Shown here: piece after piece, positions 9,557 through 61,684 of the stretch
Layout: each line of letters opens with the position of its first letter
Position numbering within the stretch: position 1 is the first letter of the stretch
Virus record (IMG/VR): IMGVR_UViG_3300037297_000066
Location: 248,001-312,000 of that record
Length of the DNA: 64,000 nt
Direction: 5' to 3' (one strand)
Notes under the pieces: generated by a model
Database searches by the model: none
Told to the model about the DNA's origin: nothing
What the model saw: the letters and a program-made list of their open reading frames with translations, nothing else
Made by a program: the position numbers and the translations under genes

Positions 9557-9634
9557 GCTCTCGGACCCCGTGGAAGGGGCGACGGATTCTAACCCCGTGT
9601 CAGAGTGAGGGTTCAACTCCCTCCGAGAGCGCCA
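9557..9634 (+). tRNA. tRNA-Sup(CUA), amber anticodon
   Basis: GCTCTCG/CGAGAGC acceptor, loop TT-CTA-AC, GAGGG-TTCAACT-CCCTC, ends GCCA. Confidence 0.75.
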
Positions 9635-9635
9635 T

Positions 9636-9714
9636 GGGGACGTAGCTCAGTGGTTGAGAGCGGCGAGCTCTAAACTCGTGTCTGTCGGGGGTTCGAGTCC
9701 CTCCGTCCTCACCA
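9636..9714 (+). tRNA. tRNA-Sup(CUA), amber anticodon
   Basis: GGGGACG/CGTCCTC, D-arm GCTC-AGTGGTTGA-GAGC, GCGAG-CT-CTA-AA-CTCGT, ends ACCA. Confidence 0.85.
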
Positions 9715-30192: not shown

Positions 30193-30278
30193 GGGGTCGG
30201 AATAGTTGGCTGGTGCCAACAGCGGTCTGTAAAACCGTTGTCTCTGACGGGGTGGTTCGATTCCACACGGCCCCACCA
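30193..30278 (+). tRNA. tRNA-Tyr(GTA)
   Basis: CT-GTA-AA, long variable arm, ACCA. Confidence 0.85.
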
Positions 30279-30696: not shown

Positions 30697-30893
30697 GATA
30701 GTAGGGACTAGTTCCCTTCGATCCTTGACAACTTGACAGGACTTTGGATGTCCGCCTCGCCACCTCCTAAGGGTGGAAACGTGGACTCTCAGATCCCCCC
30801 GGTATGGAACCGGAAACGGCTGAGGTTCGCAGCGGTGGTTATCCTCTCCTGAAATTGCCCGTGGGGTTCGTCGGAAACGGTGACCCCACATTT

Positions 30894-30967: not shown

Positions 30968-31133
30968 GACTGACATCCCGCCGAGATGAGCCTACAAGCA
31001 ATCTGCTGGTTCGAATCCAGCCTCCGGCACCGGGGCTTAGCCCTATCCCTGCCGGAGTGGCCAAATTGGAAAAGGCAACAGTCTGAAGAAACTGTGTACA
31101 ACGCAATCCCGCTCTCACACTCGGATGTCAGTC
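30968..31133 (+). ncRNA. circularly permuted tRNA-like RNA with conserved terminal helix (Y-RNA-like), copy 1
   Basis: 11-bp terminal stem GACTGACATCC/GGATGTCAGTC; T-arm precedes acceptor hairpin, D-arm and anticodon-like arm. Confidence 0.8.
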
Positions 31134-31740: not shown

Positions 31741-31814
31741 GGGTCTAAGGCTGAGGTAGCCGGCTGGTTTCCAAGTCCAGTGACGATGGGGTTCGATTCC
31801 TCATAGACCCGCCA
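31741..31814 (+). tRNA. tRNA-Trp(CCA)
   Basis: loop TT-CCA-AG, G73, CCA. Confidence 0.7.
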
Positions 31815-31973
31815 GACGACATCCCGCCGGGATGAGCATACAAGCAAACGTTGGTTCGAATCCAACCTTCCCCACCAGGGCCTAGCCCAACCAATGGGGA
31901 AGTAGCCTAGTGGATAGGCAGCGGAAAGTAACTCCGTCGCAAGACTGAACCGCTCTCACACTCGGATGTCGTC
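31815..31973 (+). ncRNA. circularly permuted tRNA-like RNA (Y-RNA-like), copy 2
   Basis: 10-bp terminal stem GACGACATCC/GGATGTCGTC; acceptor CTTCCCC-ACCA...GGGGAAG. Confidence 0.8.
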
Positions 31974-31983
31974 AAACTTTCAT

Positions 31984-32133: not shown

Positions 32134-32297
32134 ATCGAGCGTCCCGCCGAGATGAGCATACAAGCAATATGTTGGTTCGAATCCAACCTCCCCCCCTAGG
32201 GCCTAGCCCAACCAAACGGGGGAGTAGCCTAACGGTAAGGCAGCGGACTCTTAATCCGTGCGAAAGCATACCCCGCTCCCTCACTCGGACGCTCGAT
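32134..32297 (+). ncRNA. circularly permuted tRNA-like RNA (Y-RNA-like), copy 3; Lys(CTT)-type anticodon arm
   Basis: 11-bp terminal stem ATCGAGCGTCC/GGACGCTCGAT; GCGGA-CT-CTT-AA-TCCGT. Confidence 0.8.
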
Positions 32298-32623: not shown

Positions 32624-32750
32624 CATCAACTGTCGGAATGGTTGTCTAGGGACGCCTAGCCGAAGGGTTCGACACCTTCCTGGGAGCGGCGGTAGGAGGT
32701 TGGTTCGATTCCAACCCCGGCAGTGTTCTCGACCAGGCGAGGATGTGGAT

Positions 32751-32900: not shown

Positions 32901-32973
32901 GCGAGACTTGCTACCGGGTGGTGGCACCTGCCTTACAAGCAGGAGAAGCAGGGTTCGAGTCCCTGGTCTCGTA
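32901..32973 (+). tRNA. tRNA-Val(TAC)
   Basis: CCTGC-CT-TAC-AA-GCAGG. Confidence 0.75.
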
Positions 32974-32975
32974 CC

Positions 32976-33065
32976 GGGCCGGCAATGCGGACTTCAAGGT
33001 TCGCCACGACTCACAGTGCCCTTATGGGCCCGGGTCGTGTCGTCTAAGTTGGAAGACACCGGCCC
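32976..33065 (+). ncRNA. tRNA-like RNA permuted at the anticodon loop (YrlA-type architecture)
   Basis: outer GGGCCGG/CCGGCCC; order T-like arm, closed acceptor stem, D-arm GTCT-AAGTTGGA-AGAC. Confidence 0.6.
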
Positions 33066-33073
33066 TAACTCAT

Positions 33074-33145
33074 TCCAGGGTAGCTCAGTGGTAGAGCGGT
33101 CGGCTGTTAACCGATTGGCCGGGGGTTCGAATCCCTCTCCTGGAG
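33074..33145 (+). tRNA. tRNA-Asn(GTT)
   Basis: CT-GTT-AA. Confidence 0.9.
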
Positions 33146-33244
33146 CCGGAGCTTGCCTCTCTAATAAACTAGCAGCCTGGGAGAGCGTACTGGGTTCGAA
33201 GTCCGGGCAACAGTCTTTGTTGTAAGCTGCAGCAAGTTCCATTT

Positions 33245-33320
33245 GCGGGTGTAACTCAATTGGTAGAGTGTCAGCCTTCCAAGCTGAACGTTGAGAGTTC
33301 GAGTCTCTTCACCCGCTCCA
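33245..33320 (+). tRNA. tRNA-Gly(TCC)
   Basis: CT-TCC-AA, TCCA. Confidence 0.92.
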
Positions 33321-33653: not shown

Positions 33654-33713
33654 ACTTTCCTAAACCCCTCTGCTTTACCCTCGGGGAAAGTCCTCGGGTT
33701 TAGGCACAACCAA

Positions 33714-35042: not shown

Positions 35043-35091
35043 CCCCAGCAGACACACTTGGACGGTATGCCGTCCCGCCGTGTCGGGAGAG
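35043..35091 (+). promoter_or_regulatory. copy of the conserved RNA helix overlapping the RBS of the TROVE-like gene (putative autoregulatory operator)
   Basis: GACAC-ACTT-GGACGG-TATG-CCGTCC-CGCC-GTGTC directly before GGGAGAG-ATG. Confidence 0.6.
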
Positions 35092-37011
35092 ATGAAAATG
35101 GTAGACCAGGTACAGCGTGAGAACCTGGGTCCGGCAGAGCGTATCATCAACGTCCTGTTGACCTACGAGGACCACATGGTCCACAACCGGGTTGGGATCG
35201 TAGAGCCCGATCCAGACAGCCAGATCGGCCTTCGCTGGACCCAGGCAACTTGGGTCGAGAAGGACGGCAAGAAGGTTGTCTACAAGCTCCTCCCTGGGGC
35301 CCGGGGACGAAACGGAAAGACCACTCGGCGCAAGGTCGAAGTGGGCACTCTCTGGAACGACGGCACGGTTCGCAGTGCCGATCGTCGGAAGATCGGGGAG
35401 CTCCGTCAGCCTGGCCTCTTTCCCGAAGTGGCAGTCTGGATGTACCGACAGGTGGCTGAGATCTACAAGCTCGACAACGAGTTCTGTGCTCGTTGGGCCA
35501 GCTACGCTTACTCCCAGACCCACCGAGATCTGAAGGTGGTACTGGCGGCCTTCCTCCTGGTTCAGGCTCGCAAGGGTGACCCTGTGATGGACCAGGGCAA
35601 GGTAGCCTTCTTCGACGACGACTTCCGTGACGTGGGTGAGGCAATGTGCCTTCACTACGGTGGGAAGTCCGACAAGTCTGCTCTCGATGCGAAGCTTCTG
35701 CTCCGCATTCGGAAGATTCTGGAGGTCCCTGAGATCGCCCAGATCAACCGAGATCTTGGGTTCGGGAAGTCGGCTCGGAGGGCTTACCTGGGTCGTTGGC
35801 CCAGGGTCGTTCAGAAGTGGCTGAGATACCGGGAAGACAACCCGGTTCTGCTGCGGGGCTTGGTCAACAAGGGTGCTTTCCGAGCAACCGTACAGGACTT
35901 GGCTCAGCAGTCTCGGTACAGTCCGTCGAGCCCCCTCTTCTACCAGATCCTTCGGTGGCCTCAGAAGCAGGCTGACGGGGGACACCGGAAGATGGCTCTC
36001 GACCAGAAGGTGACCAAGCAGGAATCCTGGGCGGGTAAGACCGAACAGGAGATCTGCGAGATCATCACCAGTCAGAGGACTGGTTGGAAGCGTGTCACGA
36101 CTCTGGTTCCGTCAGAGATTGGGGTTACCCGAGCCATCATGGCAGCAGCTGTGGAGGCAGGGTCCCTCTCGGACAAGGACCTGATCAACCACACGCCACT
36201 TTTGGAAGAACTGGGCCTCTTGCAGGACCAGGACGTTCGGGGGCGTTGGGAGGCTGCGCTTCAGGCTGCCGAGGACCGTCGAGCTGCTAACGTGGCTCGT
36301 AACGTCAAGAGCCAGCAGACTCGTGAGCAACTCGAAGGGGCTGCTGACCAGTCTGTCCTGAAGGCTGTCGAAGAGGTGGCTACAGGGATTCGGGTCTTCT
36401 TCTGTGTGGACCGATCTTCCTCGATGGGTATCGCTATCGAGGCAGCCAAGGAGCACATCGAGAAGTTCTTGCCTGGGTTCCCGCCCGATCAGCTCTTCAT
36501 CTGTGCCTTCAACTCGTCTGCTCGGAAGGTGACTCTCAAGCAGCACTCGTCGGTTGGAGTTCGGGAAGCTTTCCGGGGCATGGTCGGCTCTGGAGGCACG
36601 GACTACGGTGCGGCTGTACGCTTCTTCTCGAAGCCCGAGTACATGCCAGCCGAGGAGGAGGTTTCGCTCTTCTTCTTCATCGGAGACGAAGCAGCGGACA
36701 CTCGTTCCTTGGTTCAGGCCGTTCGGAACTCGGATCTCAACATCGTGGCCTTCGCTCTGGTGAAGGTCGTGTCTCCCGGTTGGGACCCTGGACTCTGTGT
36801 TCAGGAAGCTGCAGCCCAGTTGGGTATCCCTGTGATCCCGATCGACGAGAAGGTGTTCTCGGACGTCTATGCGACCCCGAGGATCCTTCGTGACCTGATC
36901 GCAAATACGCCGGTAGCTCAGACCCCTGGTCACAGGGAGGTTCGGCGGGTGACCCTTCTGGACACCATTCTGGACACTGAGCTGCTCAAGAAGCCCCTGT
37001 GGGCTGCATGA
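35092..37011 (+). CDS. TROVE/Ro60-like RNA-binding protein with C-terminal vWA domain
   Basis: helical N-terminal region with TROVE-like pattern (LDAKLLLRI..YLGRWPRVVQKWL..FRATVQDLAQQSRYSP); MIDAS FCVDRSSSMG, GGTDYG and FIGDE. vWA is secure; TROVE is inferred. Confidence 0.7.
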   Translation: MKMVDQVQRENLGPAERIINVLLTYEDHMVHNRVGIVEPDPDSQIGLRWTQATWVEKDGKKVVYKLLPGARGRNGKTTRRKVEVGTLWNDGTVRSADRRKIGELRQPGLFPEVAVWMYRQVAEIYKLDNEFCARWASYAYSQTHRDLKVVLAAFLLVQARKGDPVMDQGKVAFFDDDFRDVGEAMCLHYGGKSDKSALDAKLLLRIRKILEVPEIAQINRDLGFGKSARRAYLGRWPRVVQKWLRYREDNPVLLRGLVNKGAFRATVQDLAQQSRYSPSSPLFYQILRWPQKQADGGHRKMALDQKVTKQESWAGKTEQEICEIITSQRTGWKRVTTLVPSEIGVTRAIMAAAVEAGSLSDKDLINHTPLLEELGLLQDQDVRGRWEAALQAAEDRRAANVARNVKSQQTREQLEGAADQSVLKAVEEVATGIRVFFCVDRSSSMGIAIEAAKEHIEKFLPGFPPDQLFICAFNSSARKVTLKQHSSVGVREAFRGMVGSGGTDYGAAVRFFSKPEYMPAEEEVSLFFFIGDEAADTRSLVQAVRNSDLNIVAFALVKVVSPGWDPGLCVQEAAAQLGIPVIPIDEKVFSDVYATPRILRDLIANTPVAQTPGHREVRRVTLLDTILDTELLKKPLWAA

Positions 37012-56604: not shown

Positions 56605-58032
56605 ATGGAGATCCAAGCACGTTTCGCACACACCAAGCTCAACAACTCTCAAGACAACGAGACCTTCCTCGTACTCACGCTCACGGCCCCCAAGATTGAC
56701 TGGCTGGAGAAGAGGCCGGACATTTCCGTGCTTCCGGTCATTGACGTCTCTGGATCCATGACCGGTCCCAAGCTGGAATATGCCCAGAAGTCGGCCCTCA
56801 AGTTGGTGGAGCATCTTAAGCCCGGGGATGTTTCTGGGCTAGTAGTGTTCTCCAACGGTGTGAATGTTCTAGTCCCCCCCGGGCCAGTCACGGCTGAACA
56901 GAAGGATCGACTTCGGAACGCTATTTCCAAGCTGAAGGCTTCTGGAGGCACCAACTTTGCCGAGGCCATGAGTCGATCTTTGGAGTTGGTCCAGAATCTG
57001 GACCTGCCTCCTAAGTACAACCCTCGGGTCATCATGTTCACTGATGGGGAGCCCACGGTTGGAATCACGGACAACAACGCCATCCTCAGGATACTGGCAG
57101 AGAGCCGGGCCCAGGTGACGGTGAGTGCCTTCGGGTATGGGGCCGGCGGAGTATGGGGTGGTTGTGACCAGGACTTCCTGACGGCGTTTGCCAAGCAAGG
57201 AGCTGGGAACTACGCTTATATCAAGGAGCCTGACGCCGCTCTGAGTGCTTTTGGGAAGGAACTAGGGGGGCTCCTCTCGACCTACGCCACAGACCTTTCG
57301 GTAGATGTGGAGCCCTTGGCTGGGCATCGGGTTGTGGAGGTGGTTTCCGACGTGGATGCACACGAGACTGATGTGACTGGTTTGCTAGAGGTCACGCTGC
57401 CGGACATTTTGGCTGAGGAGGCCCGGCACATCGTTCTCAAGGTTCAGACCAAGGCTGGGAAGGCCGGGCCCCGTGCAGTCAATCTGTTCGATGTCGAAGC
57501 TTCTTACCTGGTCATCACAGAGGAAGGGAAGAAAGTAGAGCAGAAGGTTTCTACCAAGGCCAAGCTTCGGTTCCATTCCGGGGACAACGAGAAGAACCCT
57601 GACAAGGTACTGTCCGAGGTTATTGGGTTGGCCCAGTTGGTTCAGGCCCAACTCAAGGCTGAGGAGAAAGCCAACGACGGGGATTACACGGGAGCGGCCG
57701 GGGTGATGCAGAATGCTCACCAACTGGAGTACATCAGCGAGAACTCCGGGCTTTCGGCCTTGGCAGGCAACATCCAGGACAGGGTTGCCTCTTCCCAAAT
57801 GTATGCTTCAAGTGCAGGTTACCGTCGGAGCACTCACATGGCGGGAACTCGGGCCTATGGAGTGGTTGGGATGGATGCCGGGGCTTCGGCTGATCTGGCG
57901 GGGTCTACCTGCTTCATGAGCTTCGACAATGAGGCGAGGGGAGCTCTGGCGGATTCCTTTCAGGCGGACTCGGGGGTAAAGGTGGAGGGTCTGGGGACCA
58001 TCCACAAGACGTCCAGCGGTAAGCGTTGGTGA
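56605..58032 (+). CDS. vWA domain protein (YfbK-like)
   Basis: VIDVSGSM, GGTNF, MFTDGEP and GAGNYAYI motifs. Confidence 0.9.
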   Translation: MEIQARFAHTKLNNSQDNETFLVLTLTAPKIDWLEKRPDISVLPVIDVSGSMTGPKLEYAQKSALKLVEHLKPGDVSGLVVFSNGVNVLVPPGPVTAEQKDRLRNAISKLKASGGTNFAEAMSRSLELVQNLDLPPKYNPRVIMFTDGEPTVGITDNNAILRILAESRAQVTVSAFGYGAGGVWGGCDQDFLTAFAKQGAGNYAYIKEPDAALSAFGKELGGLLSTYATDLSVDVEPLAGHRVVEVVSDVDAHETDVTGLLEVTLPDILAEEARHIVLKVQTKAGKAGPRAVNLFDVEASYLVITEEGKKVEQKVSTKAKLRFHSGDNEKNPDKVLSEVIGLAQLVQAQLKAEEKANDGDYTGAAGVMQNAHQLEYISENSGLSALAGNIQDRVASSQMYASSAGYRRSTHMAGTRAYGVVGMDAGASADLAGSTCFMSFDNEARGALADSFQADSGVKVEGLGTIHKTSSGKRW

Positions 58033-58239: not shown

Positions 58240-59646
58240 TTGTCCCTAAAGTACGCAGCCCAGAAGGTGAGTGACGGCCACTACGTGTTGCCCAAAGTGG
58301 CAACCATGAAGGTCGAAGTTCACGCCTTTCTTTCGGAAGCCCTCTATGAGGCTTCTGAGGAGCAGGTGTGGGATCAGGCTCGGAATGCCGCTTCCTATGA
58401 GGGAGTGGTGGGGGCCTATCTGATGCCGGATACCCACACTGGGTTTGGGGTACCCATCGGGGGTGTGGTGGTGACAGAAGACACCCTCATTCAAGCCGGA
58501 TCGGGATATGACATCTCGTGTGGGGTGCTCTACATGAAGGTATCGGGGCTTTCTGCCAAGGGTACTCGTGGTAGGTACAACCGAGAGCGTTGGATCACCG
58601 AGGTGGAGAAACGTGTGGCGTTGGGAGTGGGATCCAAGCGCCCCAAGCTGATGCCCCAGTTCTCCCCAGCGTTGTTGGAGAGTATCTTCCGATATGGGGC
58701 CAAACCTCTTGGGACGAAGCCTGATGTATGCGAAAGGCAGTACATTCCGGTTCCCGAAGGCACAGACTTCACCAAGATCGAGAAAGCCTATGAGAAAGCC
58801 CTGCCCCAGCTCGGATCTCTAGGGGGCGGCAACCATTTCATTGAGATGCAAGTGGACGAGGCCACCGGGGATGTTTGGGTCATGATCCATTGCGGGTCCC
58901 GGGGTTATGGTTGGCAGACAGCCAACCACTACTTCTACGAGGGAGCCCAGCTTCGAGGTCTCAGGAAGAACCAACGGGAATCTTCTTGGCTGAGAATCGA
59001 CGAGCCCTTGGGTAGGGAATATTGGGCCTACCACAATTCGGCAGCCAACTATGCCATCGCCAATCGCCACACCATCGTTTCCGGCGTCCAGGAGGCCCTA
59101 GGAGAGGTTTTTGGGGCTGAGGCGGAGGTCTACTACGAAATCAGTCACAACCTCGTACAAGAGGAAACTCTGGTCCTTCCCGACGGAACTACAAAGCGAG
59201 GGTTCGTGCATCGGAAAGGGGCCACCCGAGCCTTTCCGGCCGGGCATCCTGATTTGGTAGGTACCAAGTGGGAGCCGACGGGGCACCCGTGTTTGATTCC
59301 GGGGTCGATGTTCTCAGGGGCTGCCATTCTCTTTGCCGAACCTCAGGCCCATCAGTCGGCTTGTTCGGTCAACCATGGGTCTGGCCGGGTGCTCGCTCGG
59401 GGGCAGGCCAAAAGGAAGCTTCATCACAAGCAGCAACGAATCGACGACCAGATGCGGACGGTCAAACGTCGGTTGGGGGGCGTCGAAGTAGAGGGCATCG
59501 TAGGCAATAGCAAGCACACGCCTTTGGACGAATGTGGAGAGGTCTACAAGGATCTGGACGAGGTGCTTGTCGTTTTGCAGCAGACAGGTATTGCAAGAGT
59601 CGCTCATCGTCTTTACCCTGTGGCGAACCTCAAGGGAACGGACTGA
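58240..59646 (+). CDS. rtcB: RNA ligase RtcB
   Basis: MPDTHTGFGVPIGG, GYDISCG, LGSLGGGNHF, IHCGSRG, HNLV, HRKGATRA, PGSM and HGSGR motifs. Confidence 0.96.
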   Translation: MSLKYAAQKVSDGHYVLPKVATMKVEVHAFLSEALYEASEEQVWDQARNAASYEGVVGAYLMPDTHTGFGVPIGGVVVTEDTLIQAGSGYDISCGVLYMKVSGLSAKGTRGRYNRERWITEVEKRVALGVGSKRPKLMPQFSPALLESIFRYGAKPLGTKPDVCERQYIPVPEGTDFTKIEKAYEKALPQLGSLGGGNHFIEMQVDEATGDVWVMIHCGSRGYGWQTANHYFYEGAQLRGLRKNQRESSWLRIDEPLGREYWAYHNSAANYAIANRHTIVSGVQEALGEVFGAEAEVYYEISHNLVQEETLVLPDGTTKRGFVHRKGATRAFPAGHPDLVGTKWEPTGHPCLIPGSMFSGAAILFAEPQAHQSACSVNHGSGRVLARGQAKRKLHHKQQRIDDQMRTVKRRLGGVEVEGIVGNSKHTPLDECGEVYKDLDEVLVVLQQTGIARVAHRLYPVANLKGTD

Positions 59647-59658
59647 CTCGACTCAGGC

Positions 59659-61684
<2,026 letters not shown>

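What the first reader, a model, noticed from the sequence alone, without database searches (positions are those of the whole stretch)
32976..33065. Fourth permuted element, opened at the anticodon loop (YrlA-like architecture)
Seen: outer stem GGGCCGG/CCGGCCC, CAAT, T-like arm GCGGAC-TTCAAG-GTTCGC, 8-bp acceptor CACGACTC/GGGTCGTG closed by a GCCC-TTAT-GGGC hairpin, TC, D-arm GTCT-AAGTTGGA-AGAC, A. This is a tRNA read T-acceptor-D. Known: this is the arm order of the YrlA tRNA-like module. It lacks the ACUC/CGCC helix. The acceptor-closing GCCC/GGGC hairpin parallels GGGC/GCCC in the other permuted copies.
Basis: partly seen in the sequence, partly recalled or inferred. Interest (0 to 1): 0.68.

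Follow-up and report, generated by a model that had tools for sequence, protein, structure and literature searches.

The report
Orphan permuted tRNA-like RNA in phage
A 90-base stretch wedged between two tRNA genes of a 437-kb phage folds like a tRNA whose ends sit at the anticodon stem and whose acceptor stem is closed by a hairpin; this is the layout of bacterial YrlA "Y RNAs", but it lacks their protein-binding part and has no detectable relative.

Summary
The proposed fold is the minimum-energy and centroid structure (-45.5 kcal/mol, z -4.3) and it persists within the tRNA-Val/El4/tRNA-Asn precursor. The element (El4) carries U8, A14, A15:U48, G18G19, A21, A26 and UUCAA, and two G·U pairs mark + as the functional strand.

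The order T / closed acceptor / D, closed by a stem at the anticodon-stem position, is the YrlA tRNA-like topology. A 643-aa ORF 2 kb downstream on the same strand is a cryptic Ro60-like protein by structure.

El4 is not a demonstrable YrlA member:
- It has no in-register Rfam match and no 5' Ro-binding motif.
- Its T hairpin is non-canonical: 6-nt loop, 6-bp stem, C53:G61.
- It does not score with a model of the phage clade's own permuted tRNA-like family (El1-3 here, 46 cores in relatives).
- It has no homologue in about 1.3 Mb of related phage DNA.

Best reading (about 0.45): a structure-maintained, non-decoding tRNA mimic released by processing of its neighbouring tRNAs, that is, a Y-RNA effector domain without the Ro handle. 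A decayed relic and a mere processing spacer remain live rivals.

The parts
32976..32982 (+). Outer stem, 5' strand (GGGCCGG). It occupies the position of the anticodon-stem 3' strand of a tRNA.
   Evidence: Pairs perfectly (7 G-C/C-G pairs) with 33059-33065 in the MFE and centroid folds.
32983..32986 (+). CAAT, the variable-loop equivalent. The terminal U could form a Levitt-type pair with A15 of the D loop.
   Evidence: Sequence. A pyrimidine at the last variable-loop position is conserved in YrlA (10.1101/312249).
32987..33004 (+). T-like hairpin GCGGAC-TTCAAG-GTTCGC: 6 bp with one G·U and a 6-nt loop containing UUCAA. It is non-canonical (C:G at the loop-closing pair, loop one base short).
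   Evidence: The family core alignment has G:C at this pair in 74 of 74 rows. Model R1 does not align this hairpin.
33005..33012 (+). Acceptor-like helix, 3' strand (CACGACTC).
   Evidence: 8 bp with 33032-33039, one U·G.
33013..33031 (+). Cap that closes the acceptor-like helix: ACAGT, hairpin GCCC-TTAT-GGGC (33018-33029), CC. There is no free 3' end and no CCA.
33032..33039 (+). Acceptor-like helix, 5' strand (GGGTCGTG).
33040..33058 (+). Connector TC (U8 equivalent), D arm GTCT-AAGTTGGA-AGAC (A14, A15, G18G19, A21 equivalents), then A (position 26 equivalent).
   Evidence: When rotated, ARAGORN calls the element a tRNA only at 80% of its default threshold.
33059..33065 (+). Outer stem, 3' strand (CCGGCCC).
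32901..32975 (+). Upstream tRNA-Val(TAC). Its discriminator is at 32973, so only 2 nt (CC) separate it from El4.
   Evidence: ARAGORN; Rfam tRNA 43.5 bits.
33074..33147 (+). Downstream tRNA-Asn(GTT), 8 nt after El4. RNase P cleavage at its 5' end would define El4's 3' end.
   Evidence: ARAGORN; Rfam tRNA 68.8 bits. The processing step is an inference.
35080..37011 (+). Context: 643-aa ORF made of an N-terminal beta domain, a helical-repeat domain and a VWA domain. It is a cryptic Ro60/Rsr-like protein lying 2.0 kb downstream of El4 on the same strand.
   Evidence: Pfam finds only VWA_2 and the TROVE HMM is negative. The top 13 Foldseek PDB hits to the full AF2 model are all Ro60/Rsr/TROVE. For the helical domain alone against 48,161 PDB representatives, the top 3 are Ro60s at Z 9.0, 8.8 and 8.7 over 247-265 residues, and the next hit is Z 6.4.

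Best explanation
El4 is a real, strand-specific structured RNA in the phage's tRNA operon. It is a circularly permuted, non-decoding tRNA-like module with the topology of the YrlA effector domain.

Shown:
- Four perfect helices are arranged as outer (anticodon-position) stem, T-like hairpin, hairpin-closed 8-bp acceptor and D arm.
- tRNA core letters are present at the junctions and in the D loop.
- It is packed tightly between tRNA-Val and tRNA-Asn on the tRNA strand.
- A Ro60-like gene and three larger permuted tRNA-like RNAs lie within 2 kb.

Inferred:
- El4 is transcribed with the array.
- It is set free as a 90-100-nt RNA when RNase P cuts at the 5' end of tRNA-Asn and 3' processing trims tRNA-Val.
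- It has no anticodon loop, no free CCA end and none of the bulged-helix and conserved motifs that its neighbours carry, so it cannot decode and probably does not bind the Ro60-like protein in the way they do.
- Most likely it presents a tRNA-like elbow and acceptor surface to a tRNA-recognising factor, as a mimic or competitor. In effect it is a Y-RNA effector domain without the Ro handle.

It is lineage-specific. It is not a detectable member of Rfam YrlA or of the clade's own family.
For: - Fold: the proposed structure is the MFE and centroid fold, z -4.26, and it is retained in the 247-nt precursor context.
- Strand: the two G·U pairs and the UUCAA and GG loop letters work only on the + strand.
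- Chance is excluded.
- tRNA-likeness is real but partial. The rotated element is called a tRNA by ARAGORN at 80% of the default threshold, not at 90% or more.
- No donor: neither half of El4 resembles any tRNA or element in the genome or in relatives. It is therefore not a fresh duplication, yet all 29 pairs are intact, which argues for maintenance of the structure.
- Strain data: in an independent marine-sediment run, a contig covering 32828-33069 differs at 3 positions, all in the upstream tRNAs. A second contig covering 33040-33273 differs at 19 positions plus 2 indels, all downstream of 33065. El4 has none.
- Context: a Ro60-like ORF lies 2 kb downstream, RtcB is in the window, and three permuted full-cloverleaf RNAs lie upstream.
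- Precedent: the topology matches published YrlA.
Against: - No orthologue was found in 958 kb of loci from about 60 related phage contigs (best 19.9 bits, E 0.18), elsewhere in its own genome, in three related viral records, or by a 17-mer scan of IMG/VR. There is therefore no covariation support for El4 itself.
- The T hairpin lacks G53:C61 and the 7-nt loop, and thermodynamically prefers a plain 7-bp/4-nt hairpin, so an elbow may not form.
- The acceptor plus T stack would be 13-14 bp rather than 12.
- No RNA data exist.
- The strain argument rests on short Logan contigs. In two other runs the contigs simply stop at El4's edges.
Confidence: 0.45

Rival explanations
1. Decaying relic. El4 is a non-functional remnant, either of a tandem tRNA pair or of a longer Y-like RNA of the El1-3 kind that lost its outer Ro-binding stem and anticodon-like arm. 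It is carried passively in the array.
For: - It is an orphan, with no homologue in relatives.
- The T arm is degenerate at family-invariant positions.
- It is sub-threshold as a tRNA and fails the family core model.
- The arrays of relatives are highly plastic.
- Another spacer of this array (33148-33243) is deleted in a strain variant.
- Sim and Wolin's model derives YrlA from dimeric tRNAs, so intermediates and relics are to be expected in tRNA arrays.
Against: - All 29 base pairs are intact although no recent donor exists.
- The outer stem is 7 bp. That is 2 bp longer than an anticodon stem, using positions that in a tRNA would be the unpaired residues 32/33 and 37/38, which suggests adaptation to being a closed stem.
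- There are no changes in a strain whose flanks differ at 22 or more positions.
Confidence: 0.27
2. Structural spacer. The G+C-rich four-helix fold matters only as a structure inside the polycistronic precursor. For example, it could act as a barrier to 3'-5' exonucleases, or as a spacer that keeps neighbouring pre-tRNAs from mispairing and positions RNase P or Z. The tRNA-like letters would be an inherited by-product.
For: - It occupies a tRNA-sized slot, 2 nt after tRNA-Val and 8 nt before tRNA-Asn.
- Several other inter-tRNA gaps in this array are also strongly structured, for example 33654-33713 at z -5.2 and 30697-30893 at z -3.4.
- RNAfold pairs the T regions of the two flanking tRNAs with each other when they are folded together, so an insulating structure is conceivable.
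Against: - Most tRNAs of the array abut each other with 1-10 nt and need no spacer.
- Some gaps are unstructured (z about 0).
- A generic barrier does not need U8/A14/GG/A21-type letters or the exact T-acceptor-D junction geometry.
- There is no terminator-like U tract.
Confidence: 0.18
3. True permuted tRNA gene. The ends would be joined (for example by the phage RtcB) into a circle and RNase P/Z would then open the acceptor, giving a functional tRNA as in Cyanidioschyzon merolae.
For: - The phage encodes RtcB.
- The acceptor-like helix is 7-8 bp and followed by an A.
- With any 3-nt filler between the outer-stem strands, ARAGORN at 80% threshold reads a 72-nt tRNA.
Against: - No anticodon loop is encoded. 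The two strands of the outer stem pair to their very ends, and joining the processed ends would give a 10-14-nt loop without U33.
- There is no CCA.
- The T loop is one base short and C53:G61 is reversed.
- RNase P and Z products carry 5'-P and 3'-OH ends, which are not RtcB substrates (established enzymology; see PMC7824862).
- ARAGORN finds nothing at 90% or more of its threshold.
Confidence: 0.03
4. Chance arrangement of hairpins in G+C-rich DNA, or a false positive from a junction between tandem tRNAs.
For: Tandem tRNA junctions do mimic T-acceptor-D. They score 28-34 bits with model R1 and 22.9 bits with Rfam YrlA. Chen et al. warn about this.
Against: - El4's T hairpin and D arm belong to no called tRNA.
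- Its acceptor strands and outer strands are mutually complementary (8 and 7 bp), which junctions are not.
- The random expectation is far below one per genome, and z is -4.26.
Confidence: 0.02

Closest known systems
YrlA (Rfam RF02553), the tRNA-like Y RNA bound by Rsr/Ro60 in Salmonella, Mycobacterium smegmatis, mycobacteriophages and others
   Same: - Same 5'-to-3' order: anticodon-position stem strand, variable loop, T hairpin, loop-closed acceptor stem, D arm, stem strand.
- tRNA core letters are present in the D loop and junctions, with a pyrimidine at the end of the variable loop.
- It is encoded on the same strand within 4 kb of a Ro60-type gene.
- An acceptor helix of 7 bp or more also occurs in M. 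smegmatis YrlA, which RNase P cleaves (PMC4201824; 10.1101/312249).
   Different: - There is no Ro-binding module: the stem is only 7 bp, has no GNCGAAN0-1G motif and does not extend.
- There is no V arm.
- The connector is UC, not the conserved UA.
- The T loop is 6 nt with C:G closure.
- There is no in-register Rfam hit.
- It is embedded flush between tRNA genes rather than standing as its own gene.
The phage clade's own permuted full-cloverleaf RNAs: El1-3 in this window (about 30968-31131, 31816-31975, 32134-32296) and 46 distinct cores in related huge-phage contigs
   Same: - T / closed acceptor / D order, same strand, same 2-kb neighbourhood upstream of the Ro60-like gene.
- A small G+C hairpin caps the acceptor in the window's copies.
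   Different: These RNAs have features El4 lacks:
- canonical T arms (G53:C61 in 74 of 74 rows, 7-nt loop)
- usually an anticodon-like arm after the D arm, so the break is in the variable region
- a long outer stem with a 5'-strand bulge and a CCGAG/CTCGG helix
- conserved ACAAGCA and (C)ACTCGG motifs
- when rotated, a default ARAGORN tRNA call
Circularly permuted tRNA genes of Cyanidioschyzon merolae and some other algae
   Same: The 3' half is encoded upstream of the 5' half, and an intervening sequence links the acceptor ends.
   Different: Those genes encode every tRNA nucleotide and mature through a circular intermediate into decoding tRNAs. El4 encodes no anticodon loop and no CCA, and no bulge-helix-bulge motif is evident. 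(Comparison from established knowledge; not tested beyond.)
Junctions of tandem tRNA genes, the known false positives of YrlA searches
   Same: A T arm followed by a spacer and a D arm, in a tRNA array.
   Different: Junctions belong to two complete tRNAs, and their acceptor strands do not pair with each other. El4's strands pair (8 bp), it has its own closing stem, and it overlaps no tRNA.

Membership tests
YrlA (Rfam RF02553; Chen et al. 2014) | Match to the family covariance model at or above the gathering score (69 bits) | tested here: not met
   There was no hit at gathering threshold. At E up to 10, the only overlapping hit is 16.1 bits at 33046-33120, out of register and spanning into tRNA-Asn.
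YrlA (Rfam RF02553; Chen et al. 2014) | Arm order T stem-loop, loop-closed acceptor-like stem, D stem-loop, enclosed by a stem at the anticodon-stem position | tested here: met
   The MFE and centroid folds give this order. The published order is quoted.
YrlA (Rfam RF02553; Chen et al. 2014) | GNCGAAN0-1G (Ro/Rsr-binding) motif near the 5' end, with a stem extending into a Ro-binding module | tested here: not met
   El4's 5' end reads GGGCCGGCAATG and contains no GNCGAA. The stem ends after 7 bp, 2 nt from tRNA-Val.
YrlA (Rfam RF02553; Chen et al. 2014) | Encoded within about 4 kb of a Ro60 orthologue, on the same strand | tested here: inconclusive
   The TROVE Pfam model finds nothing in the genome. 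However, the ORF at 35080-37011(+) is Ro60-like by structure: the Foldseek top 13 hits are all Ro60, and the helical domain gives Z 8.7-9.0 to three Ro60s against 6.4 for the next hit. Orthology and RNA binding were not shown.
YrlA (Rfam RF02553; Chen et al. 2014) | Conserved tRNA tertiary-interaction nucleotides (T and D loops, UA connector, pyrimidine ending the variable loop) | tested here: inconclusive
   Present: U8, A14, A15/U48, G18G19, A21, UUCAA, and a variable loop ending in U. Deviating: UC connector, 6-nt T loop, C53:G61.
Permuted full-cloverleaf RNAs of this phage clade (El1-3 type) | Significant score with the family core model R1 (real members 40-79 bits; tRNA junctions 28-34 bits) | tested here: not met
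   The only hit overlapping El4 is 11.6 bits (E 0.11) at 32949-33057, and it borrows tRNA-Val's T arm.
Permuted full-cloverleaf RNAs of this phage clade (El1-3 type) | Flanking ACAAGCA/ACACGCA motif 5' of the T arm, (C)ACTCGG motif 3', and a long outer stem with a bulge | tested here: not met
   35 of 46 family cores have CTCGG 17-57 nt (mostly 36-47) after the D arm. El4 has neither motif.
Canonical tRNA (after rotation) | Recognised by a tRNA finder; 7-nt anticodon and T loops; G53:C61; 12-bp acceptor/T stack | tested here: not met
   ARAGORN finds nothing at default, 95% or 90% thresholds, and calls a tRNA only at 80% with an artificial 3-nt filler. Rotated El1-3 pass at the default threshold.
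Permuted tRNA genes (C. merolae type) | All mature tRNA nucleotides encoded, with termini able to be joined into an anticodon, D, T or variable loop | tested here: not met
   No anticodon-loop nucleotides are encoded, and the flanks would give a 10-14-nt loop without U33.
Permuted tRNA genes (C. merolae type) | Circular RNA intermediate and aminoacylated product | not testable with these tools
   No RNA run holds this DNA.

The most novel reading that the evidence does not exclude
El4 may be a free-standing, Ro-independent tRNA-elbow mimic that a huge phage makes as part of its tRNA operon. It would be the effector half of a Y RNA without the tether, acting as a competitor or decoy for a tRNA-recognising host or phage factor. 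It may also be a living intermediate of the proposed birth of Y RNAs from dimeric tRNA transcripts. The wider context makes this reading more interesting:
- The clade carries a cryptic Ro60-like gene.
- It also carries dozens of variable-region-permuted complete cloverleaves, which tRNA finders accept once rotated.
- RtcB is encoded in the same window.
The evidence therefore does not exclude that some of these RNAs are cut and re-ligated.
Probability: 0.15. Interest if true: 0.75.

Novelty: new variant of a known kind. Interest (0 to 1): 0.5.

Why it matters
Y RNAs with tRNA-like domains are known in bacteria and in a few phages, always as partners of a recognisable Ro60. Three things differ here.
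- The Ro60-type protein is invisible to sequence models. It is found only by structure, and it belongs to a family of more than 1,300 proteins from huge-phage contigs.
- The accompanying RNAs are more tRNA-like than any described YrlA.
- One element (El4) keeps only the tRNA-like part.

If El4 is expressed and stable, tRNA mimicry would be usable without the Ro tether. It would also be a concrete example for the 'Y RNAs arose from tRNA dimers' model. If El4 is a relic, it still marks tRNA arrays as the place where such RNAs are born and die.

Tried and rejected
- Rfam at gathering and at E up to 10 gave no family for El4.
- Megablast of the 6-kb region against GenBank phages found no match.
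- An exact 17-mer scan of IMG/VR returned 11 loci, all chance matches in coding DNA.
- A motif scan for the El1-3 flank in IMG/VR returned nothing.
- The El4-only covariance model R2 found no homologue in 60 sources, in its own genome or in three viral records. Two metagenome records could not be searched whole.
- blastn-short of El4's halves against the genome and all loci gave only chance matches of 16 nt or less.
- Near-identical Logan contigs carrying the Ro-like gene (L098, L099) stop about 370 nt short of El4.
- No RNA runs hold this DNA. The runs laid were contigs only, so they give no ends, strand or expression.
- Sequence searches of the 643-aa ORF against PDB found only VWA domains, both by single sequence and by profile. 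Foldseek with the helical domain alone was not significant (Rsr ranked 20th, E 0.26). Only the exhaustive VIA search separated the Ro60s.
- The terminator reading was rejected because there is no U tract.

Full report
SETTING

The window is bases 248001-312000 of a 437,331-bp IMG/VR virus record with direct terminal repeats and 55% G+C. It holds 52 ARAGORN tRNA genes plus a tmRNA, all on the + strand. The finding (El4, 32976-33065) sits inside the densest part of this array. tRNA-Val(TAC) ends 2 nt before it and tRNA-Asn(GTT) begins 8 nt after it.

OBSERVATION

RNAfold returns the same structure as both the minimum-energy and the centroid fold: -45.5 kcal/mol, 43% of the ensemble, z -4.26, and no shuffle out of 200 as stable. 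The one difference is that the T-like hairpin can zip to 7 bp with a 4-nt loop.

The fold survives when the two flanking tRNAs are folded with it. The reverse complement folds almost as well. There, however, the two G·U pairs become A·C mismatches and the tRNA-type loop letters are lost, so the + strand, which is the tRNA strand, is the meaningful one.

Read as a tRNA opened at the anticodon loop, El4 has U8, A14, A15 with U at the end of the 4-nt variable loop, G18G19, A21, A26 and UUCAA.

A simple descriptor (T hairpin, directly adjacent 7-8-bp helix closed within 35 nt, 2 nt, 4-bp D arm) hit once in 4 Mb of Markov-1 random sequence, and never together with an outer closing stem. In the real genome it hit three times, all on the + strand, and El4 was the only hit with the outer stem.

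HOW tRNA-LIKE IS IT?

Only partly.
- The hairpin at the T position has a 6-bp stem, a 6-nt loop and C:G at the loop-closing pair.
- The acceptor-like helix is 8 bp.
- After rotation, with any three filler bases between the outer-stem strands, ARAGORN reports a 72-nt tRNA only when its threshold is lowered to 80%. It reports nothing at 90%, 95% or the default.
- Rfam's tRNA model reports not even a partial hit on El4 at E up to 10.

THE NEIGHBOURS

My scan found the three 'other permuted copies': El1 at about 30968-31131, El2 at about 31816-31975 and El3 at about 32134-32296. They differ in kind from El4.
- They have perfect T arms (TTCGAAT) and 7-bp acceptors closed by a small GGGC/GCCC hairpin.
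- After the D arm comes a 5-bp anticodon-like arm.
- Everything is enclosed by an 11-bp outer stem plus a bulged CCGAG/CTCGG helix and conserved linkers.

Their break is therefore in the variable region, not the anticodon loop. When rotated, ARAGORN calls them at its default threshold: El2 as tRNA-Tyr(GTA), El3 as tRNA-Lys(CTT), and El1 as a tRNA with an 8-nt loop. Rfam YrlA touches them only weakly, at 24.9 bits (El3) and 17.7 bits (El1) over model positions 30-81. That is no better than a tandem-tRNA junction, which scores 22.9 bits.

THE Ro60-LIKE GENE

The ORF at 35080-37011(+), 2.0 kb downstream of El4, has only a VWA_2 Pfam hit. The TROVE HMM finds nothing in the genome, and PDB sequence searches see only VWA domains.

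An AlphaFold model was built from 23 homologues (pLDDT 79.6). Its 13 best Foldseek PDB matches are all Ro60/Rsr/TROVE structures aligned over 536-614 columns, although TM-scores are low.

The helical domain was then folded alone and compared with all 48,161 PDB representatives. Its three best matches were the three Ro60 representatives:
- Xenopus Ro, Z 9.0 over 262 residues
- Thermus phage phiLo Ro60, Z 8.8
- Deinococcus Rsr, Z 8.7

Each spans the whole domain. The next hit scores Z 6.4 over 112 residues. Foldseek on the domain alone was not significant.

I conclude that this is a divergent Ro60-type protein (helical ring plus VWA, with an extra N-terminal beta domain). RNA binding is untested. 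Its family has more than 1,300 members, many on 400-480-kb contigs. RtcB, a second VWA protein and GroEL lie 21-27 kb downstream.

THE FAMILY IN RELATIVES

Loci around this gene were fetched from 5 viral and 80 metagenome contigs at 44-55% protein identity (one truncated contig was 99% identical). They carry 46 distinct T / closed-acceptor / D cores that lie outside ARAGORN tRNAs, all on the gene's strand.
- About 40 have the anticodon-like arm.
- 35 of 46 have CTCGG 17-57 nt (mostly 36-47) after the D arm, and most have ACAAGCA or ACACGCA before the T arm.
- A few lack the anticodon-like arm and have the classical YrlA order with a V hairpin, for example L047:7459-7534 and L040:1572-1629.

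A core covariance model (R1) scores real members at 40-79 bits and tRNA junctions at 28-39 bits. On the 77-row alignment, all 7 pairs of the closed acceptor helix change on both sides, and 93% of cells are paired against 66% in shuffles and 42-54% in slid controls. The loop-closing G:C of the T arm is invariant, 74 of 74.

Ro60 with a tRNA-like partner is already known in some jumbo phages (PMC7824862; PMC12135203; PMC4201824). I found no description of this cryptic Ro60 clade or of variable-region-permuted complete cloverleaves.

WHERE El4 STANDS

El4 is not a member of that family by any test.
- R1 gives only 11.6 bits, and only by borrowing tRNA-Val's T arm.
- The motifs and the long stem are absent.
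- C:G replaces the invariant G:C.

A model built from El4 alone (R2) finds nothing in 958 kb of relatives' loci (best 19.9 bits, E 0.18), nothing else in its own genome and nothing in three related viral records. A 17-mer scan of IMG/VR gave only chance hits. Its halves resemble no tRNA or element in the genome or in relatives. El4 is an orphan, so there is no covariation evidence for or against it.

The only population evidence comes from Logan contigs of an independent marine-sediment run. One contig covers 32828-33069 with 3 changes, all in the upstream tRNAs. Another covers 33040-33273 with 19 changes and 2 indels, all beyond 33065. None lies in El4. If changes fell evenly, the chance that all 22 miss El4's 90 of 446 bases would be about 0.007 (my arithmetic). 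However, the contigs are short and may come from different strains, and in two other runs the contigs simply end at El4's borders. No RNA run holds the region.

MECHANISM

Shown: the anatomy, the strand, the packing between tRNAs and the genomic company.

Inferred:
- El4 is co-transcribed with the array; no promoter- or terminator-like site was found between 32188 and 33794, which spans El4.
- It is released by the enzymes that mature its neighbours.
- It then persists as a compact four-helix RNA.

Without an anticodon loop, a free CCA end or the conserved bulged helix, it can neither decode nor, probably, bind the Ro60-like protein as El1-3 presumably do. What remains is the surface that YrlA is thought to offer to a tRNA-binding effector (10.1101/312249). 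I therefore put a free tRNA mimic or competitor first (0.45). The other readings follow: a decaying relic (0.27), a purely structural spacer (0.18), a true permuted tRNA gene (0.03) and chance (0.02).

The relic reading is weakened because the helices are intact although no recent donor exists, and because the outer stem is two pairs longer than an anticodon stem. The mimic reading is weakened by the non-canonical T hairpin and the lack of any orthologue.

VERDICT

I rate it a new variant of a known kind, of moderate interest in itself. The surrounding family and the cryptic Ro60 are the more valuable lead.

Noticed in passing
window 30968-31131, 31816-31975, 32134-32296 (+); relatives e.g. 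L014:9003-9160, L023:3852-3923, L047:7459-7534: These are three roughly 165-nt RNAs that are complete cloverleaves permuted in the variable region: T arm, hairpin-closed 7-bp acceptor, D arm and anticodon-like arm, enclosed by a long outer stem with a bulged CCGAG/CTCGG helix and conserved ACAAGCA and (C)ACTCGG motifs.
- When rotated, ARAGORN calls them tRNA-Tyr(GTA), tRNA-Lys(CTT) and a tRNA with an 8-nt loop.
- 46 distinct cores occur in related huge-phage contigs, with strong covariation in the closed acceptor.
- They are below the Rfam YrlA threshold.
- It is open whether they are Y RNAs for the Ro60-like protein or are cut and re-ligated.
   Followed up: partly
window 35080-37011 (+): A 643-aa ORF annotated only as VWA is Ro60/TROVE-like by predicted structure. 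Its helical domain matches three Ro60 structures at Z 8.7-9.0, against 6.4 for the next hit. The TROVE Pfam model misses it. The family has more than 1,300 members, many on 400-480-kb contigs.
   Followed up: yes
window 56605-58032, 58240-59646, 59963-61684 (+): A second VWA-domain protein lies immediately upstream of an RtcB RNA ligase (295 bits) and a GroEL. Together with the Ro60-like gene and the tRNA-like RNAs, this recalls the Salmonella rsr-yrlBA-rtcBA repair operon.
   Followed up: partly
window 9557-9634 and 9636-9714 (+): Two tandem tRNAs with anticodon CUA (labelled 'Pyl' by ARAGORN) are candidate amber suppressors lying far from the main array. I did not examine whether the phage recodes TAG.
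   Followed up: no
window 31741-31811 (+): A tRNA-like sequence just upstream of El2 was missed by ARAGORN. It scores 27.2 bits with Rfam tRNA (gathering score 29), has an acceptor followed by CCA and a loop containing CCA, and may be a tRNA-Trp, which is otherwise absent from the set.
   Followed up: no
window 32624-32750 (+): This inter-tRNA gap has a 7-bp acceptor-like pairing (CTGTCGG...CCGGCAG) and two T-arm-like hairpins. It may be an odd long tRNA-like RNA or a tRNA with an insertion, and no tool called it.
   Followed up: no
window 33148-33243 (+): In a marine-sediment run, one strain variant lacks this 96-nt spacer between tRNA-Asn and tRNA-Gly; the joint 33147/33244 has ACA in its place. 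Spacers of the array are therefore variable between strains, whereas El4 is unchanged there.
   Followed up: partly
L028:7966-8067 (+): A related contig carries another T / closed-acceptor / D module whose closing stem (CCACG/CGTGG) sits at the anticodon-stem position. It has no anticodon-like arm and no CTCGG motif, and its acceptor continues into a long hairpin. It is topologically the nearest thing to El4, but the El4 model did not detect it as homologous.
   Followed up: partly
window 30193-30278 (+): The tRNA-Tyr(GTA) at the head of the array scores above threshold with Rfam's tRNA-Sec model (49.3 bits against 47). This is probably just a long variable arm.
   Followed up: no
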